The notes under the pieces: generated by a model
Databases searched by the model: none
The model's input: only the letters and a program-made list of their open reading frames with translations
What the model was told of the DNA's origin: nothing
Virus record (IMG/VR): IMGVR_UViG_3300046660_000488
Coordinates: 62,001 to 126,000 of that record
Strand: one strand, 5' to 3'
DNA: 64,000 nt
Program-made: the position numbers and the translations under genes
In this document: positions 3,683 through 61,400 of the stretch, in pieces
How positions within the stretch are numbered: the first letter of the stretch is position 1
How the letters are laid out: each line of letters begins with the position of its first letter

Positions 3683-4876
3683 GTGGACTTGAAGAACGTC
3701 ATCACCCCCAGCCTGCAACGTCTTCACGACGTTCTGACCAAGAGGGACCACGGTCTGTGGTTCGTCGGCGGGATGGTGCGTGACCTTCTGCTTGGCATCG
3801 AGCCCAAGGACGTGGACCTGTGCACCACCGCGACGCCCGAGCAGATGATCGCCATCTTCACCGAAGAGGGCATCCGCTTCGAGCCGACCGGCCTTCAGCA
3901 CGGCACTCTGACCGTGATCATCGACGGCGAAGTCTACGAGATCACCACGCTGCGGATCGACACCGATCAGGACGGCCGCCACGCGACCGTGGTCTACACC
4001 ACAGACCTGATCCTCGATCTGGGCCGCCGCGACCTGACCATCAACGCGATGGCCATGGATTTCGACGGCAACCTGATCGACCCGTTCAACGGCGCCCAAG
4101 ACCTGACCGACAAGCGCATCCGCTTCGTCGGCAACCCAGATGACCGGATGCGGGAAGACTATCTCCGCATCCTGCGCTGGTTGCGCTTCCACGACCGGAT
4201 CGCCACCGGCACGCCGCTGGACGCCGATACCGTGGCTGCGGCGCGCCGCAACGCGGACGGTCTGCGGAAGATCAAGCGCGAGCGGGTCTGGATGGAAATG
4301 GCGAAGATCGTCTCGGGCAACAATGGCCCGCTGATGCTCCACAACATCTACGCCATGCAACTGGCCGACTGCATCGGCCTGCCTGCTCTGTATCGCCGCA
4401 CCGGGGACGTCTACCCGGACTGCCCGCCCGGCGGCATCGACCGCATGATGGACGTCGCCAAACTGTCCAGCAATCCCGTGACCCGGTTGGTCGCTGTGCT
4501 GAGGAACGAGGCGACGCACCTGCCCATCGCGTGGAAGTGGAGCGCTGAAGAGCGTGACCTGTGCATTTTCTTGGCCGAGCGGGTGGCGGCTCCCGGTTTC
4601 GGCTGGAAGCATATGCTGGCCGTCAGCGGCGTCCGTCGCGAATGGGTTCTGGAGTTGGCCTACCTGCGGGGAGGCCGCGAAGGTCTGTTCCAAGCCATCC
4701 GCGACTGGGACGTCCCGATGTTCCCGCTGAAGGGCGGCGACCTGATCGCGGAAAAGGGCTACAAGCCCGGCCCCATCGTCGGTGAGACCGTCAAGCACCT
4801 GAAGCACATCTGGGCGACGACCGAATATCTGGCGACCCGTGAAGAGCTTCTGAGGCTCGTCGTCACCAGTGCATAG
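3683..4876 (+). CDS. cca: CCA-adding tRNA nucleotidyltransferase (class II)
   Basis: VGGMVRDLLLG..PKDVDL, DLGRRDLTINAMA, EDYLRILRWLRF, ERVWMEMAK motifs. Confidence 0.93.
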   Translation: MDLKNVITPSLQRLHDVLTKRDHGLWFVGGMVRDLLLGIEPKDVDLCTTATPEQMIAIFTEEGIRFEPTGLQHGTLTVIIDGEVYEITTLRIDTDQDGRHATVVYTTDLILDLGRRDLTINAMAMDFDGNLIDPFNGAQDLTDKRIRFVGNPDDRMREDYLRILRWLRFHDRIATGTPLDADTVAAARRNADGLRKIKRERVWMEMAKIVSGNNGPLMLHNIYAMQLADCIGLPALYRRTGDVYPDCPPGGIDRMMDVAKLSSNPVTRLVAVLRNEATHLPIAWKWSAEERDLCIFLAERVAAPGFGWKHMLAVSGVRREWVLELAYLRGGREGLFQAIRDWDVPMFPLKGGDLIAEKGYKPGPIVGETVKHLKHIWATTEYLATREELLRLVVTSA

Positions 4877-5267
4877 AAGCGAGGGCCGTGTACTTTTCGT
4901 GCACGGCCCTTAGCTCGATCTCTGCGGCGGCTTTCTTTTCGGCGATCACCTGAATGATCGCTTGCTTCACCCATTCGACCTCGGGAACGTTGGTCTCGCC
5001 CGTGAAGAACCACGTGCCGTCGTCTTTCTTGATCGGCAGATGTGCCCAGCTTACGCCGGGGTTGTTCGGGGTATGCGGCGGCGCCCTGAAGCAATAGTCA
5101 AGGTGCGTCATATCCGTTCCGTCCCAGCAAACCCATTGTTCCCAGAGGTACAGGTACAGGGGCTGCTCACCCATCATCCGAACGTAGTACGACGAATACT
5201 CCGGCATTTCCTCGAACCCAAGTTCAAGCAGGATCGACCGGATCGGTTCTACGTTCGGATAGGGCAT
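4863..5267 (-). CDS. Hypothetical protein (134 aa)
   Basis: Operon packing. Confidence 0.7.
   Translation of the reverse strand: MPYPNVEPIRSILLELGFEEMPEYSSYYVRMMGEQPLYLYLWEQWVCWDGTDMTHLDYCFRAPPHTPNNPGVSWAHLPIKKDDGTWFFTGETNVPEVEWVKQAIIQVIAEKKAAAEIELRAVHEKYTALASMHW
4882..4910. terminator. Hairpin at a convergent gene junction
   Basis: AGGGCCGTG/CACGGCCCT inverted repeat. Confidence 0.5.
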
Positions 5268-5270
5268 GGG

Positions 5271-5552
5271 TCAGAAATCCGCGTCGAAATTGCCTGCGGC
5301 TGCGCGGTCGGCGACGTCGCTGGCCTTCAGTTCGTTGAACCCGCCGACGCGAACGCCATCGACGAAGATTTGCGGAACCGTACGCTTGGGTCCTTCCAGA
5401 CCCTGCTCGTCATAGAATGCGAACCGCTTGGTGTCGTCGTTGAGGACGATGAACTCGTACGAGATTTTGTGATCGTCGAGCCACACCTTCGCGGCTTCAC
5501 AGTATGGGCAGGGCGGTTCGGTTTTTCCGTAGACGACAATATCCATGATCAT
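5271..5552 (-). CDS. Glutaredoxin
   Basis: CPYC active site, TVPQIF, VGGF. Confidence 0.93.
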   Translation of the reverse strand: MIMDIVVYGKTEPPCPYCEAAKVWLDDHKISYEFIVLNDDTKRFAFYDEQGLEGPKRTVPQIFVDGVRVGGFNELKASDVADRAAAGNFDADF

Positions 5553-13548: not shown

Positions 13549-14171
13549 TTTCCTTTGATGCGCGGGATTTCGCGCAGGATCAGGCCATAGTAATCCATGT
13601 AGGCTTTGTACTCCGGCATGGCCTCGATCTCGCGGAGCATGTCTTCAGGCGGCTTGGTCAGCGCAAACTGCGTGACCGCGATGGCGGTGGCCGGGTCCAC
13701 GTCGGGACGCATGGCCCACGCCAGAGCGTACTTGACCCCATCGCGCAGACGCCACGGGTCCTCGACCTCGGTGGCCAGCTTTTCGATGTAGCAGATCATG
13801 TAGTGCATCAGGGCTTGTTCATAGCCCGTTTGCTTGATGACGCGCGGCTCCGCCGTGCCGGTCAGGATGCTCTGAGCCACGTAGGCGGCCGAGCCATCTG
13901 CGGCGGCTTGATAGCGCAGCTTCTGCTCAACGTAGATCGCTTGGGCGAGGCCGGGCGTTGTCGGCTGGAGGCCCAAGTTCTCGTGCATGTCGGTGATCAT
14001 GGCGCGGAACTGCTCGGACGACGCCAGAATCTTCGCCGGGTCGAGTTCGACCGGCTTGATCTTCCGCACGTATTTCTTCGCGCCCTTGCCGACTTTCAAA
14101 CCCACGCTATGCCACCGTTTCTGGTTTACGAGAAACAGCAGCATAGCATCGTTTTGGTTGAAAGCAATCAC
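13545..14171 (-). CDS. Hypothetical protein (208 aa)
   Basis: Overlapping start/stop packing. Confidence 0.7.
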   Translation of the reverse strand: MIAFNQNDAMLLFLVNQKRWHSVGLKVGKGAKKYVRKIKPVELDPAKILASSEQFRAMITDMHENLGLQPTTPGLAQAIYVEQKLRYQAAADGSAAYVAQSILTGTAEPRVIKQTGYEQALMHYMICYIEKLATEVEDPWRLRDGVKYALAWAMRPDVDPATAIAVTQFALTKPPEDMLREIEAMPEYKAYMDYYGLILREIPRIKGK

Positions 14172-15406
14172 TCTTCGCCCAAGCTGGAGTACTTGTAGTC
14201 CCTCCAGTCGAGGCCGCCGATCAGGTCGCGGATACCGTCAACCCGAGCTTGCGTGCCAGCGGTCGGGTGAACCGCCTTGGCGATGGTCGCTCGGATCAGG
14301 TCAGCGGGGTCGGCGCCGCGCTTGATCAGGAACATGTACTGGGCCTCCGGCTGCTTCAGGTTCGCGTTGACGTACTGCGCGAATTCCTTCTGGTCGTCGA
14401 TCCGAATGCTGTCGTACAATTCCTTCACCTGAACAGCGCGCTCTTCCACCGCTGCGGCGAAGTCGGCCGCATAGGCTTCCACGGCCTTGCGGTCGTTCTC
14501 TTCCATGAACGGCTTGACGTCGTCCACGGTGTTGTGCGCGATCATCGCCAGCACGTCTTTCTCGTGCTGGAGGAAGTCCTTGGTCTTGTGAATCTGGCAG
14601 TACCAGAGGCCCTTGACCTTGTACATCCGGCCGTCGTGGAACCGGACGATGTAGCCTTCCATGCCCTGAACGTCGTGGACCTCAGCCATGAACGTCTCGA
14701 TGCTCTCCACGCCGCCGGGCAGGGCGCGCACGACTTCCATGCCCGCTTTCTCGGCGTGCCGCACCATCTTGTCGTACGGCATGTATCCGCCAAACAGGTT
14801 GTCGCGAAGCGCCAGCAAGACCAGACGGTCTTCCGGATAGTCGATGACGATCTTCTGCTTTCGCGAGCACCACTCGAACAGCGGCGTCCAGCCGTGGTTG
14901 ATCATGTTGGCCGCCCATTCCGCGTAATGCGGGTTGGCCTTGATCCACTCGTTGACCGGCTTGGCCACGTCGGTCTCGCCCATCTTCGTGCACCAGACGA
15001 GGCCGTCAGCCTGAGCCGGGCCAGCGCCCGTCCACATCGGGTTGATCATCGACCCGTCCATCTTTTCGAGGACGTGGTGCGGCTCCGACCAGTCGATCAC
15101 GTCGATCTGGCTCTCGGGCTTCTCACCGATGTTGAAGAACTTGGCGAACTTGCGCGCGAGGATGCGGCCGTCCTTGGAGAACGTCAGACCCCGGCATTCA
15201 CGCAGCACCGTGTACTCGCGGTTCAGCGCGGGATCGTCGGTGTTCGGGAACGGGAAAATGCCGTCGAAGCTGATGACGTAATTGAAGATCACGTAATCAC
15301 CACGGTCTGCTTCGATGAACGCGGACGTTCCAGTACGCGCGTTGTGGTTCGCAACAGCCTGACGCACTTCGTCAAGCGTGATGTTCATCGGGAAATGGTA
15401 TCGCAT
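14168..15406 (-). CDS. rnlA: RNA ligase, T4 Rnl1 family
   Basis: RECRG, KFFNIGE, motif I EKMDGSMI, FEW, EGYIV, MYKVK. Confidence 0.93.
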   Translation of the reverse strand: MRYHFPMNITLDEVRQAVANHNARTGTSAFIEADRGDYVIFNYVISFDGIFPFPNTDDPALNREYTVLRECRGLTFSKDGRILARKFAKFFNIGEKPESQIDVIDWSEPHHVLEKMDGSMINPMWTGAGPAQADGLVWCTKMGETDVAKPVNEWIKANPHYAEWAANMINHGWTPLFEWCSRKQKIVIDYPEDRLVLLALRDNLFGGYMPYDKMVRHAEKAGMEVVRALPGGVESIETFMAEVHDVQGMEGYIVRFHDGRMYKVKGLWYCQIHKTKDFLQHEKDVLAMIAHNTVDDVKPFMEENDRKAVEAYAADFAAAVEERAVQVKELYDSIRIDDQKEFAQYVNANLKQPEAQYMFLIKRGADPADLIRATIAKAVHPTAGTQARVDGIRDLIGGLDWRDYKYSSLGEE

Positions 15407-15759: not shown

Positions 15760-16353
15760 TTAGGCGGCGATGTCGGCGCGGTTCTTGATGATGCGGTCGA
15801 TGATGCCGAACTCCAGAGCCTGCTGGGGGCTCATGAAGTTGTCGCGTTCCATCGCCTTCTCGATGACTTCCAGCGGCTGGCCGGTGTTCTCGTGGAGCAT
15901 CCGGTGCAGGCGGCGCTGGATGTCCAGCATTTCGTCCATCTGGATTTTCATGTCCAAGGCGATGCCACGGCTACCGCCGCTCGGGTCGTGGATCATGATG
16001 CGCGAGTCCGGCAGGGCGTAGCGCTTGCCCTTCTGGCCAGCGGCCAGCAGCATGGCGCCCATCGAGCAGGCTTGACCCATGCACAGGGTCGCCACGTCCG
16101 GCTTGATGAAGTTCATCGTGTCGCGGATCGCCAGACCAGCGGTGACGACGCCGCCCGGCGAGTTGATGTACATCGTGATGTCATCGTCGCCTTGGCTTTC
16201 GAGGTAAAGCAACTGGGCGACGACGGTGGTGGACATGTTGTCCTCGACCGGACCGTTCAGGAAGACGATCCGGTGACGCAGCAACAGGCTGTAGATGTCG
16301 AACGCACGTTCGCCACGGCCGTCAGCCTCGACCACCATAGGAATGAGAGACAT
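15760..16353 (-). CDS. clpP: ATP-dependent Clp protease proteolytic subunit
   Basis: [17 protein letters not shown], catalytic Ser (ACSMG), His (MIHDP) and Asp (ERDNF) intact. Confidence 0.97.
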
Positions 16354-20886: not shown

Positions 20887-21186
20887 CTACTGTGCCAGCT
20901 TGTCGGGAACGGCTTCCAAGGGAAAACCATTCTTGGTCGCGTCGTTCCGAATCTTCGCGCAGTACCACTCCGCGACCTCACGAGTGTATTCACCAATTCG
21001 GGCGTAGCCCTCGGTGTGAACTTTCATCGTGAGTTCGAAGGCTTTGTCCTCGTCGAGGCCAAAAATGCTCTGGATCAGAGCCGTCACGAATTCCACCGGG
21101 GTGAAATTGTCGTTCAAGAGCCGGACCGCATAGCGCGACGGCGCCTTGAATTGGGTGCGTTCGAGAACGCCTTCTTGCGCGCTCAT
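20887..21186 (-). CDS. clpS: ClpS N-degron adaptor
   Basis: YAVRLLNDNFTPVEFV, VHTEG.A, TREVAE, GFPL. Confidence 0.92.
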   Translation of the reverse strand: MSAQEGVLERTQFKAPSRYAVRLLNDNFTPVEFVTALIQSIFGLDEDKAFELTMKVHTEGYARIGEYTREVAEWYCAKIRNDATKNGFPLEAVPDKLAQ

Positions 21187-22321: not shown

Positions 22322-22759
22322 ATGAGCAACTTTGCACGCCACGTTATTGGCTACGACTGGCTCCTGAACATCCCCACGGACAATCAGGACAGCTACCCAC
22401 CCCACGACATCGACTCGCTGAGCGAGACCCACTACCGCCTGACTTTGGCCGTGGCCGGTTTCCGTCGTGAGAACATCATGATCACCACCAAGGACGGCTA
22501 TCTCAACGTCGCTGGCACTTTCCTGTCGAAGGAAGAGCGCGCCGCGAAGGAACGAGACGTCCTGAATGGAAAGACGCTGAACCCCACAGCGCCCAAGTCT
22601 CTGCACAAGGGCATCGCCTTCCGGAATTTCAACCGTCAATTCAAGATCGGCCCCGATGTGGAAATCATCAACGCCAGCTTGGAGAACGGTCTGCTCGTCA
22701 TCGACATGGAGCGCCAACTGCCGGAAGCGAAAACCCTCAAGACCATCCCCATCCGGTAA
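22322..22759 (+). CDS. Small heat-shock protein (IbpA/Hsp20)
   Basis: YPPHDI, YRLTLAVAGF, LHKGIAFRNF, ASLENGLLVID, IPI; TAAATA upstream. Confidence 0.93.
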   Translation: MSNFARHVIGYDWLLNIPTDNQDSYPPHDIDSLSETHYRLTLAVAGFRRENIMITTKDGYLNVAGTFLSKEERAAKERDVLNGKTLNPTAPKSLHKGIAFRNFNRQFKIGPDVEIINASLENGLLVIDMERQLPEAKTLKTIPIR

Positions 22760-25026: not shown

Positions 25027-26289
<1,263 letters not shown>

Positions 26290-33996: not shown

Positions 33997-34362
33997 ATGA
34001 GCCCCGAAGACCTAGAACTCTGGAAGAAGGTGACCGAAGGTCTGGTTCCCTTGCTTCCCAAAACCAGCGCTCCGGCAATCCGGCCGGATGCGCTCGTTAT
34101 TCAGCGTCCCCGTGCGCGCCAGTCGGAAATCGACTTGCACGGCCTCACCATCCAACAAGCTTGCGTCGAGACCCGGCAGTTCATCACGGACGCCAAGGCC
34201 GCAGGCCTGCGTCACGTGACCATCATCACGGGACTGTCCGGCTACATCCGCCGGGAATTCCCCTTCTGGGTTGATCAGCTACCCGAAGTCCGCAAGATCG
34301 AGCCGTTCAGCGGCGGCGGAGCCTTCAAAGTCTATCTCAAACGCGATAAGCGCCGAGCGTAA
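33997..34362 (+). CDS. Stand-alone Smr-domain nuclease (SmrB-like)
   Basis: N-terminal EDLELWKKV helix, IDLHGLT..QA, IITG, GGGA. Confidence 0.9.
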   Translation: MSPEDLELWKKVTEGLVPLLPKTSAPAIRPDALVIQRPRARQSEIDLHGLTIQQACVETRQFITDAKAAGLRHVTIITGLSGYIRREFPFWVDQLPEVRKIEPFSGGGAFKVYLKRDKRRA

Positions 34363-41543: not shown

Positions 41544-41565
41544 AGTCGTTGACGAAAATAATTGT

Positions 41566-41594
41566 TGACGAGAAATAGGCGCTGTGACTAAATA
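41566..41594 (+). promoter_or_regulatory. Composite TTGACG / TAAATA promoter of the tRNA operon
   Basis: TTGACG-N17-TAAATA. Confidence 0.65.
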
Positions 41595-41691
41595 GAATTA
41601 TCAGCGGTGAGTGCGCGGGACTTTCAGTTACCCCGGATCACCGAAACTCAATCGCCCCAAGGGGCACAGACGACAGAAAGGGAATAGTGTT

Positions 41692-41784
41692 ATGACCACG
41701 ATCATCAGTTCACACTCGTATTGCTATTCCTCCAGCTATCATTCGGGTAGCGGGTTGCTGTCGTGCGAGGATTTCACGGGCTAA
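41692..41784 (+). CDS. Attenuator leader peptide (30 aa) MTTIISSHSYCYSSSYHSGSGLLSCEDFTG
   Basis: RBS GAAAGGGA; codons 6-18 are only Ser/His/Tyr/Cys, matching the downstream tRNA set; not in ORF track. Confidence 0.85.
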   Translation: MTTIISSHSYCYSSSYHSGSGLLSCEDFTG

Positions 41785-41811
41785 GGTCCAAGTCGAAATC
41801 ACCAAGTGAAC

Positions 41812-41884
41812 GCAACCCCGAGCACCCACACAGGTCCGGGGTTTTTCTTTGCCCCGTCGCCTGAAAAGGTTCCGGGGTTTTTTA
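41812..41884 (+). terminator. Tandem intrinsic terminators (attenuator) upstream of the tRNA cluster
   Basis: AACCCCG/CGGGGTT+TTTCTTT (41814-41850) and GCCCCG/CGGGGT+TTTTT (41851-41884); GCAACCC(41812-41818) can alternatively pair with GGGTTGC (41752-41758). Confidence 0.85.
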
Positions 41885-41932
41885 TTGTCTGAAAGGGTTA
41901 ACGAATGAAGTAAACAAGTCGATGTACTTTGC

Positions 41933-42024
41933 GGAGCCGTGGTAGAGAGGCTTATTGCACCCGTTTCGAAAGCGGGAGTGGTCGTAAAAACCCACCGAGG
42001 GTTCGAATCCCTCCGGCTCCGCCA
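41933..42024 (+). tRNA. tRNA-Ser(CGA)
   Basis: CCCGT-TTCGAAA-GCGGG, long variable arm, GGTTCGAATCC, G73-CCA. Confidence 0.95.
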
Positions 42025-42053
42025 AGTACATCGAATATCTGAAGCTCCTTCGC

Positions 42054-42143
42054 GGAGGGCGGGCAGGCCGGTAATGCAGCGCACTGCTAATGCGTACAGC
42101 CCTTCAAACGGCTGAGAGGGTTCGATTCCCTCGCCTTCCGCAA
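42054..42143 (+). tRNA. tRNA-Ser(GCT)
   Basis: GCGCA-CTGCTAA-TGCGT, long variable arm; 3' end GCAA (CCA not encoded). Confidence 0.92.
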
Positions 42144-42155
42144 AGGAGCTTCAAT

Positions 42156-42247
42156 GGAGCCGTGGCCGAGTGGCTTAAGGCGCTCGCTTGGAAAGCGAGT
42201 GTGGTCGTAAAAACCCACCGTGAGTTCGAATCTCACCGGCTCCGCCA
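42156..42247 (+). tRNA. tRNA-Ser(GGA)
   Basis: CTCGC-TTGGAAA-GCGAG; acceptor stem and variable arm identical to Ser(CGA). Confidence 0.95.
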
Positions 42248-42251
42248 ACAT

Positions 42252-42338
42252 GTTGTGATGACCGAGTGGTCGAAGGTGCGGGATTGCAACCCCCGTAGCG
42301 TAAAGCTCACGTGGGTTCGAATCCCACTCACAACTCCA
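42252..42338 (+). tRNA. tRNA-Cys(GCA) with atypical long variable arm
   Basis: CGGGA-TTGCAAC-CCCCG, U73-CCA, variable hairpin AGC-GTAAA-GCT. Confidence 0.88.
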
Positions 42339-42362
42339 AATACGCTCCGTGGTCTGTCTTGT

Positions 42363-42446
42363 GGGCAGGTGGGTGAGTGGCTGAAACCGGAGGACTGTAA
42401 CCCCTCTCTGAAAGGCGCGCTGGTTCGAATCCAGCTCTGCCTACCA
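42363..42446 (+). tRNA. tRNA-Tyr(GTA)
   Basis: GAGGA-CTGTAAC-CCCTC, variable arm, A73-CCA. Confidence 0.92.
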
Positions 42447-42478
42447 GTCAGACCACGGAGCAAAATGTTCTTTCTCAT

Positions 42479-42563
42479 GCACAGGTGGTGTGAGTGGTTT
42501 AAGCCGGGAGACTGTAAATCTCCTCCGAAAGGGACGCTGGTTCGAATCCAGCCCTGTGCACCA
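42479..42563 (+). tRNA. tRNA-Tyr(GTA), second copy
   Basis: GGAGA-CTGTAAA-TCTCC, A73-CCA. Confidence 0.94.
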
Positions 42564-42610
42564 GAAAGAACATTTGAGCCAGTCTAGCGAAAGCAAAGCT
42601 GGTTCATTTT

Positions 42611-42686
42611 GCTAGTGTAGCTCAGTTGGTAGAGCGTCGGCTTGTGGAGTCGATTGTCGCGGGTTCGAGCCCCGCCGCTAGTTCCA
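42611..42686 (+). tRNA. tRNA-His(GTG) lacking G-1 (G1.U72, U73)
   Basis: TCGGC-TTGTGGA-GTCGA; base -1 is T. Confidence 0.9.
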
Positions 42687-42739
42687 TTTCAACCCGAGCA
42701 TCCGGCAATTGTGCCGGTGCTCACAACAGGAGAAATATC

Positions 42740-42970
42740 GTGCAAGTCCAGACCCACACGCAATGCGTTCTGCGTCGCGCTACGGGGTCCACTCAAGTCT
42801 CGTGGATTCCGACCAAATTCGCTCAGGAAGGTCGTGTTCTCGAACTTGATGAAGATGGCCGTGCAAACGGCTGGACTGTCGCGGAAGTCTGGGGCTTCAA
42901 CATGCCCTCCAAGATCGTCTTCGAGCGTGAACGCGATTTCAAGAACCACCGCAAGGCGACCGACGTATGA
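42740..42970 (+). CDS. Hypothetical protein
   Basis: AGGAG RBS, GTG start. Confidence 0.65.
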   Translation: MQVQTHTQCVLRRATGSTQVSWIPTKFAQEGRVLELDEDGRANGWTVAEVWGFNMPSKIVFERERDFKNHRKATDV

Positions 42971-43134
42971 GCAAGCCCGACAAGAAAAAGGCCAAGCTCC
43001 AATCGGCGATCACCGCGCTAGAGGCCAAGCTGCAACAGTCCCTCGGGAAGAAGGACTCGCGCACCGTTGAAATCGACGTCCCCGGCACTCTGCGTCAGAT
43101 TGCCGTCCTGAAGAAGCAATTGGAGGCCGTGTAA
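42967..43134 (+). CDS. Small basic coiled-coil protein (55 aa), not in ORF track
   Basis: ATGA and TAATG overlaps with both neighbours. Confidence 0.7.
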   Translation: MSKPDKKKAKLQSAITALEAKLQQSLGKKDSRTVEIDVPGTLRQIAVLKKQLEAV

Positions 43135-43412
43135 TGGCTGGCCGGATCGAAACGTATACGCACAGCGACAAGTCGGTTCCCAACAAGGGAGGCGCCATTG
43201 TCGCAGTCCGCTCGCAGACCGATTTCGCGGCCCGCACGGACGAGTTCATAGCCTTCGCCCAGAAGGTCGCCAAGATGTCGTTCGCGGCTCAGGCAACCAA
43301 CTGGGAGGACGTCACGGCCGCCTTCCCCGATTTGGAAGATGAGCGTGTCGCCCTGACGAAGGCGATCAAGGAAAAGGTCGAGATCGACCAGATCGTCATC
43401 CTGACGATCTAA
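43134..43412 (+). CDS. tsf: Minimal elongation factor Ts core subdomain (92 aa)
   Basis: GRIETYTH...GGAIVAVRSQTDFAARTDEFIAFAQKVA matches EF-Ts G.I.SYIH...GVLVEVNCETDFVARNEEF..LA; KEKVEI matches GENIKV. Confidence 0.8.
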   Translation: MAGRIETYTHSDKSVPNKGGAIVAVRSQTDFAARTDEFIAFAQKVAKMSFAAQATNWEDVTAAFPDLEDERVALTKAIKEKVEIDQIVILTI

Positions 43413-43416
43413 GAGG

Positions 43417-43524
43417 TCTGGGTTGACTGAGTGGTCATAAGGTTGATCGGATACTAGAGAGCGGAGGTGGGTGTACCGGCCCAACACCAAGGCTCACGTG
43501 GGTTCGAATCCCACACCCGGAACA
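43417..43524 (+). tRNA. Aberrant tRNA-like gene with intact acceptor/D/T arms and an expanded, unpaired anticodon region
   Basis: TCTGGGT/ACCCGGA acceptor; T arm GTGGGTTCGAATCCCAC identical to the Cys tRNA at 42252; no canonical anticodon stem. Confidence 0.6.
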
Positions 43525-43541
43525 TTTACGAGGACAAGGAC

Positions 43542-44160
43542 ATGTTGAGAGGCACGAGAATTCTGGAAGGCGACGAAGCCGTCGCCTACGCTAAGGTGAT
43601 CGACACGCTGCGGGTGTGTCTTCATTGAAGCTGGCTTCGAGGAAGTGATCCTTCCGGCGATCTGGGAACAGCAGACCTTCATTGATAAGGCTGGCCCCGA
43701 GATCGTCAACCAGATGTGGGCATTCAAGGACAAGGGCGACCGCCCTGTCTGCCTCATCCCCGAAGTCACCGGTCTCGTGCAAGAGACTTGGCGGGATACA
43801 TGGTCGAAGACGTGCAAGTCCAAGCGCATCTTCTACGTCTCCCGCTGCTACCGCTACGAACGCCCCCAAGCTGGGCGCTACCGTGAATTCACACAGTTCG
43901 GGGTAGAGTTGCTTGGGGACGTTCCCGGCGGGACCGAAGAGGTCAAAGGTCTGCTGATCGCCGTGCTCGACAAGCTCGGCCTCAGTTACCGGTTCAGCGA
44001 CGCGGTCAAGCGAGGCTTGACCTACTATGTCGAGGACGGCTTCGAGGTCGAATGTGAGAGCTTGGGCGCCCAGAAGCAGATCGCCGGTGGCGGTCGATAC
44101 GCGGAAGGGATCGGGTGGGCCATTGGTGTGGACCGCCTGCTGCTCGCGCTCTCGAAGTAG
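43542..44160 (+). CDS. hisS: Catalytic-domain-only histidyl-tRNA synthetase, made via +1 frameshift at 43620-43625 (205 aa)
   Basis: Frame-0 MLRGTR...TLRVCL joins frame+1 IEAGFEEVILP, gapless against HisRS motif 1; motif 2 RYERPQAGRYREFTQ; motif 3 GGGRY..GWAIGVDRL; no anticodon-binding domain. Confidence 0.88.
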
Positions 44161-44167
44161 TTTCTAT

Positions 44168-44243
44168 GGTGGTGGTAGTTCAGCGGTAGAACGCCAGACT
44201 GTGACTCTGGATGTCGCGGGTTCGATCCCCGTCCATCACCCCA
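44168..44243 (+). tRNA. tRNA-His(GTG) with canonical G-1:C73
   Basis: G-GTGGTGG/CCATCAC-C-CCA; CCAGA-CTGTGAC-TCTGG. Confidence 0.95.
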
Positions 44244-44337
44244 AATTCTGGTTGACCAAATACCCCGGCGGGTGTTAGGTTGGCCAATCGATCAACTCCT
44301 CACGCTTGTATTTCATTGCAGCAAGAGGAGAAGAAAG

Positions 44338-44589
44338 ATGCAAGTTTTCGTACTGACCGAGTCGCATCACATCGCGTACGAGGGAACGTGGACCGTAGTC
44401 CAAGGCGTCTATCTGACGCGGGATGAAGCCTTCGCGAAAGTGAAGGAACGCCTGCCAAAGGAAGCCGACCATGGGCAAGAAAAGTTCATGATCGTTCGGA
44501 GCCGTAGTGCAGACGAGCAGTGGTTCAGGCTACGTGAAATGACCGTGGGCGAGTACCAAGGTCGTGACGTTCTGTTCTATGAAGACTAA
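44338..44589 (+). CDS. Hypothetical protein
   Basis: GAGGAG RBS; start MQVFVL. Confidence 0.7.
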   Translation: MQVFVLTESHHIAYEGTWTVVQGVYLTRDEAFAKVKERLPKEADHGQEKFMIVRSRSADEQWFRLREMTVGEYQGRDVLFYED

Positions 44590-44641
44590 CGAGTGGGCGG
44601 GCTTCGGTCCGCCCATTCCACCCGCCGGACCGACGTGATAC

Positions 44642-44732
44642 GGAGGGTTGGCCGAGCGGTAAGGCTCTGGTCTTGAAAACCAGTGACAGGGTGACGAGCC
44701 CTGCGGGGGTTCGATCCCCTCACCCTCCGCCA
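44642..44732 (+). tRNA. tRNA-Ser(TGA)
   Basis: CTGGT-CTTGAAA-ACCAG, long variable arm, G73-CCA. Confidence 0.95.
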
Positions 44733-44994: not shown

Positions 44995-45699
44995 TCAGAT
45001 TTCGTCGCTATCCGGATCGAAGGTCTGGTTGAAGACCGACTTGATCTGCTGCGGATAGAACGCGATCCACCAGTCAGTCGGCTTGTACCCACGCGATCCG
45101 CCATCGGCCATGGTGTCGATCAGATGGATGCCGTCATAGCCCTCGCTGATCAGTTGCTGCTGGAACGCGGCGACGTCTTCGGTCTTGGATTTCACTCCGT
45201 CCGGCAGATGGTTCATGACGCGCGTCCAAGCATCGTTGGACAGCATTTCCTTCTGCTTGGCGTCGTAGGCCTTCCGGATGCGGTAGTAGTCGTTGTGGGG
45301 ATCGTTCTGGTCGAGGGTCTTGAGCTTTTGGGCCAGATCGCGAAGCTCTTCGAGGTCTTCGTCCCAGAGCCAATCGCCGCTCATCGCCAGCGGGCGCTTG
45401 ATCGACAGGAAGCACGGCTTGACGTTGGCGCCGGTCGCAGGCCCGGTCTCCGGGTGATAGCCCGCGAAATAGTTCGCCGTGTCCGGGCTGACGTCGAACC
45501 AGAACCCGAGGCGGTTGAAACCAGACCCGGCCGAGCCGAAGGCATGGTGCTTGAAGGTGGCGAAGTCTCGGAACGTGCCGTGGTAGCAGACCAGCGGCTG
45601 ACCTTGCTTGTCCACGACCTTAGAGCCCTTGAACCACGCTTGGAACGCAGGGTTCTCGGCGACGTTGGCTCGTTCCATGAGATTGATGTATTCGCGCAT
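44995..45699 (-). CDS. ADP-ribosyltransferase-like protein (ART-PolyVal type), late
   Basis: AFQAWFKGSKVVD..G.PLVCYHGT, GFWF, VKPCFLSIKRP, GYDGI, IAFYPQQIKS; TAAATA 5 nt upstream of ATG. Confidence 0.75.
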   Translation of the reverse strand: MREYINLMERANVAENPAFQAWFKGSKVVDKQGQPLVCYHGTFRDFATFKHHAFGSAGSGFNRLGFWFDVSPDTANYFAGYHPETGPATGANVKPCFLSIKRPLAMSGDWLWDEDLEELRDLAQKLKTLDQNDPHNDYYRIRKAYDAKQKEMLSNDAWTRVMNHLPDGVKSKTEDVAAFQQQLISEGYDGIHLIDTMADGGSRGYKPTDWWIAFYPQQIKSVFNQTFDPDSDEI

Positions 45700-45896
45700 G
45701 GTCGTATTTATGACCAAGCAAAAGGCTCCAGAACCGGTGGGGACCGTTCTGGAGCCTTCCGGGGATTATCCGGGGACCAGCGCCGTGTGTTGTTCAACGC
45801 TGGCCTGACGAGGCTCCCACGGGCCTCTGTGTCGGTCAAACGAAAACACCCGGCCCATTGCTGGACCGGGTGCAAGATTTCGTGACTGGCAGAGGC

Positions 45897-47998: not shown

Positions 47999-48073
47999 TG
48001 GCGCCTTCAGCCGGGCTCGAACCGGCGACCTACAGATTTAGAGTCTGCTGCTCTACCGCTGAGCTATGAAGGC
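47999..48073 (-). tRNA. Amber suppressor tRNA (CTA), G73
   Basis: GCCTTCA/TGAAGGC, GCAGA-CTCTAAA-TCTGT, GGTTCGAGCC, CCA encoded. Confidence 0.92.
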
Positions 48074-48079
48074 GTCCTT

Positions 48080-48155
48080 TGGTGATCACAGTCGGGCTCG
48101 AACCGACGACCCGCAGATTTAGAGTCCGCTGCTCTACCAACTGAGCTATGCAATC
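48080..48155 (-). tRNA. Amber suppressor tRNA (CTA), A73
   Basis: GATTGCA/TGTGATC, GCGGA-CTCTAAA-TCTGC, CCA encoded; TTGACC promoter upstream. Confidence 0.92.
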
Positions 48156-61322: not shown

Positions 61323-61400
61323 GACGCGGTGTCCCGAGTCGGCTAGGTACGTGGTCCGCAAGATCATGGCACGGTGGTTCAAGTCCATCCCGCGTCACCA
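61323..61400 (+). tRNA. Atypical tRNA with GCA anticodon (C33, A73)
   Basis: GACGCGG/CCGCGTC, GTGGT-CCGCAAG-ATCAT, GGTTCAAGTCC, CCA. Confidence 0.65.

What the first reader, a model, noticed from the sequence alone, without database searches (positions are those of the whole stretch)
41566..44732. Whole locus as an integrated translation-rescue (anti-tRNA-depletion) system
Seen: one co-oriented unit holds the attenuator leader, 4 Ser, 1 Cys, 2 Tyr and 2 His tRNAs, an aberrant tRNA, a mini EF-Ts, the frameshift-gated HisRS and three small unknown ORFs (42740, 42967, 44338). Elsewhere in the window are tRNA healing/sealing enzymes: Pnk-like kinase, Rnl1, CCA enzyme, RlaP-like NTase, CYTH and HAD phosphatases. 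Established: several anti-phage systems destroy or block tRNAs (PrrC, PARIS, retron PtuAB, toxSAS), and phage tRNAs and Pnk/Rnl1 can counter them. Inference: two independent ribosome-based sensors switch on a repair and replacement kit, and the small ORFs may be unrecognised components.
Basis: inference. Interest (0 to 1): 0.85.

Follow-up and report, generated by a model that had tools for sequence, protein, structure and literature searches.

The report
Self-regulating phage tRNA and HisRS module
A giant soil phage carries a tRNA gene cluster behind a short "test" peptide made of exactly the amino acids those tRNAs serve, plus a histidine-free mini histidyl-tRNA synthetase that is made only if the ribosome slips at a histidine codon. 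Both look like supply-on-demand switches, but the wider "anti-defence kit" idea is not supported.

Summary
The described parts are real. They include 4 Ser, 1 Cys, 2 Tyr and 2 His tRNAs, a tRNA-like remnant, a 92-aa EF-Ts fragment, a split mini-HisRS and three small ORFs, all on the + strand.

Two sensors are supported by comparison.

(1) A 30-codon leader (41692-41784) has 13 consecutive Ser/His/Tyr/Cys codons. It follows a conserved promoter and precedes intrinsic terminators. Four related giant phages have the same set-up. The one whose leader lacks Tyr also lacks tRNA-Tyr.

(2) The mini-HisRS needs a +1 shift at CTT-CAT-TGA (43620-43628).
- All 74 frame-shifted junctions among 89 distinct ones carry [C/G]TT-CA[T/C].
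- Most have a GGAGG-like element 3 nt upstream, the prfB geometry.
- 93 of 101 such enzymes contain no histidine at all.
- The same unannotated shift occurs in Pseudomonas and Burkholderia chromosomes, where the gene is labelled HisZ.

The HisRS-adjacent tRNA-His is the canonical G-1:C73 type. The cluster copy is the alpha-proteobacterial type, which suggests an orthogonal pair.

Not supported:
- One integrated anti-defence kit. The EF-Ts fragment and orf44338 are lineage-specific.
- Linkage to the RNA-repair genes, which lie 12-39 kb away.
- The CYTH and HAD domains, which were not found.

No expression data exist.

The parts
41565..41594 (+). sigma-70-like promoter: TTGACG, 18 nt, TAAATA
   Evidence: Read. 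The same TTGAC-N17-19-TAAATA element stands upstream of the leader in L004-L007.
41692..41784 (+). Leader ORF of 30 codons (MTTIISSHSYCYSSSYHSGSGLLSCEDFTG). The regulatory run is codons 6-18 (41707-41745).
   Evidence: Its Ser codons cover all four isoacceptor classes. It uses rare codons: TCA, AGT and TAT x3.
41745..41759 (+). Candidate antiterminator strand (GGGU.AGCGGGUUGC). It pairs with 41812-41828, the 5' arm of the terminator.
   Evidence: Constrained folding: terminator probability falls from 0.8-0.9 to about 0 when a ribosome is stalled at codons 12-14, and is partly reduced at codon 11. The complementarity alone is not significant against shuffles.
41814..41886 (+). Composite or tandem intrinsic terminator with U-tracts at 41842-41846 and 41878-41883
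   Evidence: -31 kcal/mol. Terminators follow the leader in all five phages.
41933..42686 (+). Seven tRNA genes: Ser(CGA), Ser(GCU), Ser(GGA), Cys(GCA, 87 nt with a long variable arm), Tyr(GUA) x2 and His(GUG). The His copy lacks G-1 and has G1.U72 and U73.
42740..42970 (+). orf42740, 76 aa, with an invariant C-terminal HRKATDV; function unknown
   Evidence: AF2 pLDDT 80, with no PDB fold match. Present next to the HisRS in L005 and L006 only.
42967..43134 (+). orf42967, 55 aa, helical and Lys-rich; function unknown. It overlaps its neighbours by ATGA and TAATG.
   Evidence: present in L005 and L006
43134..43412 (+). Mini EF-Ts: only subdomain N of the core, with the TDF motif that enters the EF-Tu nucleotide pocket
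   Evidence: Not present in L004-L007. Relatives elsewhere sit just after two tRNA-Arg genes or away from tRNAs.
43417..43522 (+). tRNA-like remnant, a paralogue of the long-arm tRNA-Cys with a disrupted anticodon arm, ending about 20 nt before the HisRS start
   Evidence: L005 has a similar element. In other relatives a normal tRNA occupies this place.
43545..43628 (+). HisRS zero-frame ORF (27 codons plus stop). The shift cassette is CTT 43620-43622 (P site), CAT 43623-43625 (A site, His) and TGA 43626-43628.
43624..44160 (+). HisRS +1 frame: catalytic core with motifs 2 and 3 and the His-binding motifs. It has no insertion domain, no anticodon-binding domain and no histidine residue.
44168..44243 (+). 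tRNA-His(GUG) of the canonical bacterial type (encoded G-1, C73), 8 nt after the HisRS stop
44338..44589 (+). orf44338, 83 aa, with weak DUF7336 / phrog_3002 matches; lineage-specific
   Evidence: Near relatives in three other soil metagenomes show zero depth here.
44642..44732 (+). tRNA-Ser(UGA), the fourth Ser isoacceptor

Best explanation
The locus is a demand-regulated supply module for a subset of the translation apparatus. It is built from two independent feedback switches. It is not one integrated anti-defence operon.

Switch 1, the leader attenuator:
- A host-type promoter drives a leader whose 13-codon run samples Ser (all four isoacceptor classes), His, Tyr and Cys.
- If any of these aminoacyl-tRNAs is short, the ribosome stalls in the run. 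A downstream G-rich stretch then pairs with the 5' arm of the terminator, and RNA polymerase reads on.
- Read-through reaches the matching tRNA genes and, with no terminator seen in between, probably also the small ORFs, the EF-Ts fragment and the HisRS.
- If supply is good, the ribosome runs to the stop codon and transcription ends.

Switch 2, the frameshift:
- The mini-HisRS is made only when the peptidyl-tRNA slips from CUU (or GUU) to UUC while the A site waits on an empty CAY His codon.
- In most relatives the slip is helped by an internal Shine-Dalgarno-like GGAGG placed 3 nt upstream.
- If His-tRNA(His) is plentiful, the His codon is read and translation stops at once.
- The enzyme contains no histidine, so it can be made when His-tRNA is absent.
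- It lacks the anticodon-binding domain. It therefore most likely charges the adjacent canonical G-1:C73 tRNA-His through the acceptor end, giving the phage a His channel independent of an alpha-proteobacterial host's divergent HisRS/tRNA-His pair.

Shown:
- the sequence features and their conservation;
- the change of reading frame at the shift site;
- the histidine-free composition of the enzyme;
- the tracking of the tRNA set by the leader's codon set.

Inferred:
- actual regulation;
- the antiterminator pairing;
- the substrate of the enzyme;
- the identity of the host.
For: Leader:
- It is conserved with promoter and terminators in five phages, L003-L007.
- Its composition is unique among about 24,000 small ORFs.
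- All tRNAs behind it are Ser, Cys, Tyr or His once the missed ones are added.
- L007 has no Tyr codon in its leader and no tRNA-Tyr.
- Every leader uses AGY, UCA, UCG and UCY, although TCA makes up only 3% of Ser codons.
- Stall-dependent loss of the terminator is modelled in L003, L004 and L006.
- In L004 the HisRS directly follows the leader's terminators.

Frameshift:
- 74 of 89 distinct junctions are +1, and all 74 have NTT-CAY (CTT 53, GTT 21; CAT 58, CAC 16). 67 have an SD-like element.
- Third-position variability jumps by +1 exactly at the site, and the wobble G of the CGG codon inside GGAGG is conserved.
- The shifted state spans the whole tree.
- No start codon is conserved in the +1 frame.
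- 93 of 101 shifted enzymes have zero His and 8 have one, against about 5 expected. In-frame relatives have up to 6.
- The motif-2 residues that contact C74 and A76 and clamp the acceptor stem in the T. thermophilus complex are kept (PMC4357726).

Two tRNA-His types: read against PMC3064791.
Against: - There are no transcript, ribosome or protein data. No RNA run holds this DNA.
- Equilibrium folding shows little or no switch in L005 and L007.
- The antiterminator complementarity is no better than shuffles in L003 and L005.
- The window's own shift site has only a weak SD-like element (GGGTG).
- The leader occurs in only one narrow clade.
- More tRNA helps only if tRNA, not the amino acid, is limiting. 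The leader cannot tell the two apart.
- The mini-HisRS also lacks the insertion domain that clamps the acceptor stem, so tRNA charging is unproven.
- Chromosomal copies in Pseudomonas have no tRNA beside them.
- The window's cluster tRNA-His has U73, not the A73 of the alpha-proteobacterial type.
Confidence: 0.62

Rival explanations
1. All co-oriented genes, plus the distant Pnk-like kinase, Rnl1, CCA enzyme and RlaP, form one inducible kit. The kit is switched on by the two sensors to survive host tRNA-cleaving defences such as PrrC, PARIS and PtuAB.
For: - Both sensors exist.
- Rnl1, an AAA_33 kinase, a CCA-type enzyme and RlaP are in the window.
- A second, host-independent tRNA-His/HisRS pair would survive loss of the host's His channel.
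- From general knowledge: phage tRNAs and Pnk/Rnl1 are known to counter tRNA nucleases.
Against: - The parts are not co-conserved: the EF-Ts fragment and orf44338 are in 1 of 5 phages, orf42740 and orf42967 in 3 of 5.
- The repair genes are 12-39 kb away, the kinase and Rnl1 on the opposite strand.
- No CYTH or HAD domain was found.
- The frameshift switch is also present in non-phage chromosomal surroundings.
- No defence target is known that matches Ser+Cys+Tyr+His.
Confidence: 0.15
2. This is an ordinary, constitutively expressed tRNA island. The leader ORF is a small peptide or is untranslated. The frameshift works at a fixed rate and merely sets a low HisRS level.
For: - Giant phages commonly carry large tRNA arrays, and the more distant relatives have 30-45 tRNAs per 12 kb with no leader.
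- The antiterminator is statistically weak.
Against: - A fixed-rate shift does not explain why the A-site codon is always His (74 of 74), using both synonyms. In-frame relatives tolerate Arg, Lys or Gln at that residue.
- It also does not explain why the enzymes are histidine-free.
- A plain small peptide does not explain the match to the tRNA set, the rare-codon choice or the terminators.
Confidence: 0.12
3. The mini-HisRS is not a tRNA synthetase. It is a histidine-activating or histidine-sensing paralogue (HisZ-like, or a ligase for another acceptor). The frameshift uses His-tRNA only as a read-out of histidine supply.
For: - It lacks both the insertion domain and the anticodon-binding domain.
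- Databases name it 'ATP phosphoribosyltransferase regulatory subunit'.
- The Pseudomonas copies sit away from tRNAs.
- From general knowledge: truncated aaRS paralogues with other acceptors are known, such as EpmA/PoxA and aa:carrier-protein ligases.
Against: - It is much closer to HisRS (E 2e-21) than to HisZ (E 2e-7).
- The motif-2 residues that bind the tRNA CCA end are invariant.
- In phages it is tightly linked to a canonical tRNA-His, 8-51 nt away in L003-L006, L022 and L028.
- Canonical HisRS charges minihelices that lack the anticodon arm (PMC3064791).
Confidence: 0.15

Closest known systems
Leader-peptide transcription attenuators of amino-acid operons and pheST (trp, his, leu, thr, ilvGMEDA)
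   Same: - Short translated ORF with a Shine-Dalgarno sequence.
- Run of regulatory codons.
- Intrinsic terminator before the regulated genes.
- Multivalent design, like thr and ilv.
- Use of rare codons in the run.
   Different: - The regulated genes are tRNA genes themselves. Full-text searches found no such case.
- The codon run samples every isoacceptor class of Ser.
- It is carried by a phage.
- The antiterminator is not firmly defined.
prfB (release factor 2) autoregulatory +1 programmed frameshift: AGGGGG-UAU-CUU-UGA-C
   Same: - CUU in the P site slips onto UUN.
- An SD-like stimulator ends 3 nt before the P-site codon.
- The A-site codon is decoded with the help of the gene's own product.
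- The zero-frame product is a short dead-end peptide.
   Different: - The slow A-site codon is a sense codon (His), read by the product's product, His-tRNA(His).
- A stop follows one to six codons later in all but one junction.
- GUU is also used in the P site.
- The protein lacks the sensed amino acid altogether.
- It is not listed in the 2016 recoding review.
Yeast Ty1 and 'hungry codon' +1 frameshifting (CUU-AGG-C)
   Same: Peptidyl-tRNA-Leu slips from CUU by +1 because the next sense codon is read slowly by a scarce tRNA.
   Different: - In Ty1 the scarce tRNA is fixed by gene dosage and the shift sets a product ratio.
- Here the scarce species is the output of the encoded enzyme, which gives negative feedback.
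Orthogonal HisRS/tRNA-His pairs of alpha-proteobacteria versus other bacteria (Yuan et al. 2011, PMC3064791)
   Same: Two tRNA-His identity types occur: G-1:C73, and no G-1 with U72 and A73. The phages carry both.
   Different: - Here the canonical-type tRNA is paired with a 200-aa core-only enzyme.
- Orthogonality in the unknown host is inferred, not tested.
T4 Pnkp/Rnl1 repair of PrrC-cut tRNA-Lys, and phage tRNAs that bypass PARIS or retron-Eco7/PtuAB
   Same: The phage encodes Rnl1, a P-loop kinase, a CCA-type enzyme and spare tRNAs.
   Different: - There is no linkage to the locus.
- No Pnkp phosphatase domain was found.
- No evidence exists that the tRNAs are nuclease-resistant variants.

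Membership tests
Leader-peptide transcription attenuator | Short ORF with a ribosome-binding site and start codon, downstream of a promoter | tested here: met
   SD-like sequence and ATG in all five leaders. Conserved TTGAC-N17-19-TAAATA promoter.
Leader-peptide transcription attenuator | Cluster of codons cognate to what the operon supplies | tested here: met
   13 of 13 consecutive S/H/Y/C codons, and the downstream tRNAs are Ser, Cys, Tyr and His. The leader that lacks Tyr goes with a cluster that lacks tRNA-Tyr.
Leader-peptide transcription attenuator | Intrinsic terminator between the leader and the regulated genes | tested here: met
   GC-rich hairpins plus U-tracts in all five.
Leader-peptide transcription attenuator | Mutually exclusive antiterminator that depends on ribosome position | tested here: inconclusive
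   Modelled switch in L003, L004 and L006, but not in L005 or L007. Duplex energies against shuffles give p from 0.01 to 0.63.
Leader-peptide transcription attenuator | Read-through rises when the cognate aminoacyl-tRNA is limiting | not testable with these tools
   No RNA data hold this DNA.
prfB-type autoregulatory +1 frameshift | Coding frame changes by +1 at one conserved place, with no start codon for the downstream frame | tested here: met
   Third-position entropy moves from zero-frame position 3 to position 1 at the site. GTG, GTA and GTT alternate at the only candidate start.
prfB-type autoregulatory +1 frameshift | Slippery P-site codon that can re-pair in +1 (CUU to UUN) | tested here: met
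   CTT or GTT followed by C in 74 of 74 junctions.
prfB-type autoregulatory +1 frameshift | A-site codon whose decoding depends on the gene product | tested here: met
   CAT or CAC (His) in 74 of 74 junctions of a HisRS gene. The dependence itself is inferred.
prfB-type autoregulatory +1 frameshift | Internal SD-like stimulator about 3 nt upstream of the P-site codon | tested here: met
   GGAGG-like element at -8 to -4 in 67 of 74 junctions, with a conserved wobble G. It is weak in the window itself (GGGTG).
prfB-type autoregulatory +1 frameshift | Measured frameshifting that responds to product level | not testable with these tools
   Needs reporters or mass spectrometry.
Histidyl-tRNA synthetase (class IIa) | Catalytic core with motifs 1-3 and the His-binding motifs | tested here: met
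   Pfam PF13393 at 5e-16. Aligns to T. thermophilus HisRS residues 34-156 and 243-316. RYERPQxGRYR and GGGRY are invariant.
Histidyl-tRNA synthetase (class IIa) | C-terminal anticodon-binding domain and insertion domain | tested here: not met
   The protein ends after motif 3, and residues 157-242 of the T. thermophilus enzyme have no counterpart. It is therefore a core-only paralogue, not a standard HisRS.
Elongation factor Ts | N-terminal UBA-like domain, full core and coiled-coil | tested here: not met
   Only profile positions 1-75 of 204, equal to E. coli residues 66-136. The TDF motif is present.
T4-type tRNA repair (Pnkp + Rnl1) | Rnl1 ligase | tested here: met
   RNA_lig_T4_1 at 3e-31 plus T4_Rnl1_C at 14168-15406(-).
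T4-type tRNA repair (Pnkp + Rnl1) | Bifunctional kinase-phosphatase next to the ligase | tested here: not met
   The ORF beside Rnl1 has no Pfam hit. An AAA_33 kinase lies 11 kb away. No HAD phosphatase was found.
Phage tRNA as decoy or bypass of a tRNA-cleaving defence | The phage tRNA resists the nuclease that cuts the host tRNA | not testable with these tools
   Host and defence are unknown.

The most novel reading that the evidence does not exclude
Two previously undescribed feedback circuits act on the translation apparatus itself.

(a) A leader-peptide attenuator reads out the charged level of each individual isoacceptor and answers by transcribing those very tRNA genes.

(b) A histidine-free, core-only HisRS is made only through a His-codon-gated +1 frameshift.
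- This switch is widespread in giant phages and in Pseudomonas, Burkholderia, Paraburkholderia and Chromobacterium chromosomes, where it is annotated as a ~190-aa HisZ-like protein.
- In phages of alpha-proteobacteria the enzyme would form an orthogonal pair with a canonical tRNA-His. That pair would keep His decoding alive if the host's own HisRS or tRNA-His is lost.
Probability: 0.5. Interest if true: 0.9.

Novelty: new variant of a known kind. Interest (0 to 1): 0.8.

Why it matters
If the readings hold, several things follow.
- tRNA genes can be placed under translational-stall control. This would be a direct tRNA homeostat, which has not been described for leader-peptide attenuation.
- An aminoacyl-tRNA synthetase can sense its own product through a hungry sense codon. 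This would be a sense-codon counterpart of the RF2 circuit.
- The switch is testable at once, because it also sits in cultured Pseudomonas syringae, Burkholderia gladioli and Chromobacterium, and in the isolated Sinorhizobium phage Phosso.
- Hundreds of 'ATP phosphoribosyltransferase regulatory subunit' annotations would need correcting.
- It explains why these giant phages carry HisRS in particular. They may run a second, host-independent histidine decoding channel, which bears on how phages cope with host shut-off or tRNA-directed immunity.
- The histidine-free composition is a clean example of a rescue enzyme built to be made under the shortage it cures.

Tried and rejected
- Pfam and PHROGs on the three small ORFs gave nothing usable.
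- The protein atlas search for orf42740 returned only unnamed phage clusters, best score 0.85.
- The AF2 model of orf42740 (pLDDT 80) has no PDB fold match with E below 0.7.
- A general scan for other codon-matched leaders upstream of other tRNA clusters found none. It covered the Cys-Cys-Ala cluster at 61323, the two CUA tRNAs at 48155(-) and the Gln/Leu/Pro arrays in relatives. The device is specific to the Ser/Cys/Tyr/His cluster of one clade.
- An exact-word search for the leader core in viral contigs gave only the known phages and one chance hit, L104.
- A promoter inside the tRNA-like element at 43417 was rejected because it has no acceptable -10 (and reading of the sequence).
- RNA evidence is absent: no RNA run holds the DNA. 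DNA contigs confirm the assembly at 172x in the source sample and show near relatives in three other soils.
- A RiPP-precursor reading of the Ser/Cys-rich peptide was rejected:
  - the run starts at residue 6;
  - no maturation enzymes are nearby;
  - terminators follow it;
  - its composition tracks the tRNAs.
- Sequencing error as the cause of the frameshift was rejected, because 74 independent junctions share it.
- Re-initiation at GTG 43645 was rejected. That codon is GTA or GTT in relatives, and the +1 frame is under protein-level constraint from the codon right after the site.
- The GeneTack survey lists a large '+1 tRNA synthetase' cluster classed as phase variation (PMC3711429). It could not be tied to this family.

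Full report
**What the window is**

The window is part of a 578-kb viral contig from a rhizosphere metagenome. It is identical to IMG/VR locus L003, and the source run covers it at 172x without differences. The nearest isolate is the 469-kb Sinorhizobium phage Phosso.

**Check of the observation**

tRNAs:
- ARAGORN and Rfam agree on nine tRNA genes on the + strand between 41933 and 44732. These are Ser(CGA), Ser(GCU), Ser(GGA), Cys(GCA), Tyr x2, His, then His and Ser(UGA).
- A tenth, tRNA-like element at 43417-43522 scores 27.9 bits, just under the Rfam threshold. ARAGORN folds it only with an 18-nt insertion in the anticodon arm.

Protein-coding parts:
- 43134-43412 is a 92-aa fragment of EF-Ts, equal to E. 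coli residues 66-136, with the TDF motif.
- The HisRS is split between frame 0 (43545-43628) and frame +1 (to 44160).
- The ORFs at 42740, 42967 and 44338 exist. The first two and the EF-Ts fragment overlap by ATGA and TAATG, which suggests coupled translation.

Elsewhere in the window:
- I confirmed a PolyA_pol/CCA-type enzyme, Rnl1, RlaP and an AAA_33 P-loop kinase.
- I found no CYTH or HAD domain in about 70 ORFs scanned.

**The leader**

- ATG 41692 opens a 30-codon ORF. Codons 6-18 are all Ser, His, Tyr or Cys.
- It follows TTGACG-18 nt-TAAATA and is followed by a composite hairpin (-31 kcal/mol) with two U-tracts.
- Four other giant phages have the same order of promoter, small 5' hairpin, SD, S/H/Y/C-rich leader and one or two intrinsic terminators. 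These are L004, L005, L006 and L007 (L007 and L008 are the same phage). Their HisRS is 80-83% identical to the window's.
- In about 24,000 small ORFs from 100 related loci, a score of 11 or more S/H/Y/C residues in 12 is reached only by these leaders.

What follows the leader, once tRNAs missed by ARAGORN are added, is always the matching tRNA set:
- Four Ser isoacceptors, Cys, Tyr and His in L003, L004 and L005.
- In L006, the same set except that the only tRNA-His found is the canonical one beside the HisRS.
- In L007, Ser x4, His x2 and Cys. L007's leader contains no Tyr codon and its cluster has no tRNA-Tyr.

Codon choice points to sensing of tRNA species rather than of an amino acid alone:
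- Each leader uses Ser codons of all four decoding classes, although TCA is only 3% of Ser codons in this phage. By codon usage alone that is expected in 15-23% of leaders.
- 9 of 11 leader Tyr codons are the minor TAT.

Evidence on the switch itself is mixed:
- Folding with a ribosome footprint held unpaired removes the terminator for stalls at codons 12-14 in the window, with a partial effect at codon 11.
- It does the same for codons 2-14 in L004, and partly in L006.
- It has little or no effect in L005 and L007.
- The candidate antiterminator pairing (41745-41759 with 41812-41828) is not better than shuffles.
- Equilibrium folding is a poor guide to a kinetic switch, but this step remains the weakest.

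Placement and specificity:
- In L004 the HisRS start lies directly behind the leader's terminators. In that phage the HisRS is plainly in the leader's regulon.
- No other tRNA cluster examined has such a leader.

**The frameshift**

Where the frames meet:
- In the window, frame 0 reads ..CGG GTG TGT CTT CAT TGA. The HisRS continues in +1 as ATT GAA GCT...
- Phosso has the same break, with frame 0 conserved at protein level upstream and +1 downstream.

How widely it is conserved:
- Scans of viral, metagenomic and genomic collections gave well over 100 relatives.
- Of 89 distinct junctions, 74 are +1. All 74 have NTT-CAY in frame 0 (CTT 53, GTT 21; CAT 58, CAC 16).
- 67 have a GGAG/GAGG/GGGG-type element in the nine bases before it.
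- The frame-0 stop follows at once in 28 junctions, and within six codons in all but one of the rest.

Evidence that the frame really changes at this site:
- Column variability peaks at frame-0 position 3 upstream and at frame-0 position 1 downstream.
- The wobble G of the CGG codon inside CGGAGG is conserved in 67 of 73 sequences.
- GGAGG ends 3 nt before the P-site codon, as in prfB.
- The only start-like codon downstream (GTG 43645) is GTA or GTT in relatives.

Evidence that the His codon itself is under constraint:
- In-frame relatives carry Arg, Lys or Gln at the residue that would follow the shift, in about a third of cases.
- The shifted genes never have A or G at the second base of the new codon. 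The constraint therefore lies on the frame-0 His codon.

History and composition:
- On a tree the shifted state is spread throughout, and in-frame genes are nested in a few clades. The shift is therefore old and retained.
- 93 of 101 distinct shifted enzymes (about 205 aa) contain no histidine and 8 contain one. In-frame relatives have up to six.
- An enzyme that restores His-tRNA and can be made without any His-tRNA, behind a gate that opens when the His codon cannot be read, is a coherent negative-feedback design.

Prior reports:
- Full-text searches and the 2016 recoding review give no report of it.
- A large '+1 tRNA synthetase' cluster in the GeneTack survey could not be tied to it.

**What the enzyme is**

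- It aligns to T. thermophilus HisRS residues 34-156 and 243-316. It therefore has the catalytic core but neither the insertion domain nor the anticodon-binding domain.
- The motif-2 residues that hold C74 and A76 and clamp the acceptor stem in the solved complex are invariant.

The phages carry two kinds of tRNA-His:
- The copy next to the HisRS has an encoded G-1 and C73.
- The copy in the cluster lacks G-1 and has G1.U72 and A73 (U73 in the window). This is the type of the alpha-proteobacterial subgroup, whose own HisRS relies on the anticodon, A73 and U72 and is orthogonal to the canonical pair (PMC3064791).

A core-only enzyme cannot read the anticodon. I therefore infer that it serves the canonical tRNA-His, and that together they form a host-independent pair in an alpha-proteobacterial host. 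That host is suggested by the Sinorhizobium relative and the rhizosphere origin.

**Beyond phages**

- The same gene, with the same cassette (CGG AGC TAT CTT CAT CGA), is in chromosomes of the Pseudomonas syringae and fluorescens groups, Paraburkholderia, Burkholderia, Chromobacterium and Collimonas.
- There it is annotated as a ~190-aa 'ATP phosphoribosyltransferase regulatory subunit' that starts inside the +1 frame.
- In P. syringae pv. tomato it lies among ordinary chromosomal genes, without tRNAs and without phage genes.

**Is the locus one system?**

What is constant and what is not:
- Across the five leader-bearing phages, the constant parts are the promoter-leader-terminator, the Ser/Cys/(Tyr)/His tRNAs, the frameshifted HisRS and a canonical tRNA-His.
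- orf42740 and orf42967 are present in three of five.
- The tRNA-like remnant is in two.
- The EF-Ts fragment and orf44338 are only in the window.
- Near relatives in three other soils cover the EF-Ts fragment but give no depth over orf44338.

Relatives of the variable parts elsewhere:
- Relatives of the EF-Ts fragment sit just after two tRNA-Arg genes in one other phage lineage and away from tRNAs in Caulobacter phage CcrPW.
- Relatives of orf42740 elsewhere have no tRNAs nearby. Its model has no known fold.

Wider picture:
- More distant relatives place the HisRS inside arrays of 30-45 tRNAs, usually right after a tRNA. This suggests that the tRNA-like remnant in the window is kept as a processing site.
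- The repair enzymes are far away and are not tied to the locus by any evidence here.

**Verdict**

- The two sensors are well supported by comparison. Together they amount to a self-regulating supply module for Ser, Cys, Tyr and His decoding.
- The 'integrated anti-defence kit' is an over-reach. The trigger could equally be host shut-off, late-gene codon demand or amino-acid shortage.
- Nothing has been measured. The decisive experiments are simple and can be done in cultured bacteria.

Noticed in passing
window 47999-48155 (-): Two tandem tRNAs with anticodon CUA (amber-suppressor type, called 'Pyl' by ARAGORN) lie behind their own TTGACC promoter-like site. 12 of 86 predicted genes end in TAG, including the HisRS, and several stay open for 24-48 codons beyond it. 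Whether TAG is partly read through in this phage was not resolved.
   Followed up: partly
window 42252-42338 (+); L006 5393-5478: tRNA-Cys(GCA) of 87 nt with a long, class-II-like variable arm and a U73 discriminator. This is unusual for tRNA-Cys. L005 and L007 instead have about 74-nt tRNA-Cys genes that ARAGORN misses.
   Followed up: partly
L116-L152; P0001-P0120; L196-L198: Hundreds of bacterial genes annotated 'ATP phosphoribosyltransferase regulatory subunit' (~190 aa) are this core-only HisRS. They occur in Pseudomonas, Burkholderia, Paraburkholderia, Chromobacterium and Collimonas. They have an unannotated 27-30-codon upstream frame and the CTT-CAT shift site.
   Followed up: partly
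window 44995-45717 (-): An ADP-ribosyltransferase of the 'polyvalent protein' type (PF18760, 1e-20) lies immediately downstream of the locus on the opposite strand.
   Followed up: no
window 33997-34362 (+); 20887-21186 (-); 15760-16353 (-); 25027-26289 (-); 22322-22759 (+): The phage encodes an Smr-domain protein, a full ClpS/ClpP/ClpX set and an HSP20. From general knowledge, the Smr family includes nucleases that cut mRNA at collided ribosomes. Together these make up a protein- and translation-quality-control gene set.
   Followed up: no
window 3372(-), 19956(-), 21450(-), 28707(+), 41437(+), 41565(+), 44252(+), 48202(-), 48665(-): There is a recurrent extended promoter-like motif (T)GGTTGAC[CG]AGA..., followed 16-19 nt later by a -10-like hexamer. 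It probably marks the phage's host-RNA-polymerase promoters.
   Followed up: partly
L109-L111 about 4817-5282; L002 3980-4276: The 92-aa EF-Ts fragment is a family of its own. In one unrelated phage lineage it sits directly after tRNA-Arg(ACG) and tRNA-Arg(UCU). In Caulobacter phage CcrPW (gp256) it has no tRNA nearby.
   Followed up: partly
L005 11880-11989 (-) and 12039-12145 (-): Two Rfam tRNA matches of 107-110 nt (46-53 bits) are not called by ARAGORN. They may be intron-containing or otherwise expanded tRNAs.
   Followed up: no
window 43412-43497: In one soil metagenome (run X4), a near relative's contig replaces the first 84 nt of the tRNA-like element with 71 other letters. This element is therefore variable even among close relatives.
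   Followed up: no
window 42740-42970 and L005, L006, L113-L115: The orf42740 family ends in an invariant HRKATDV at the very C-terminus. The predicted fold is three strands plus a long C-terminal helix and matches nothing solved.
   Followed up: partly
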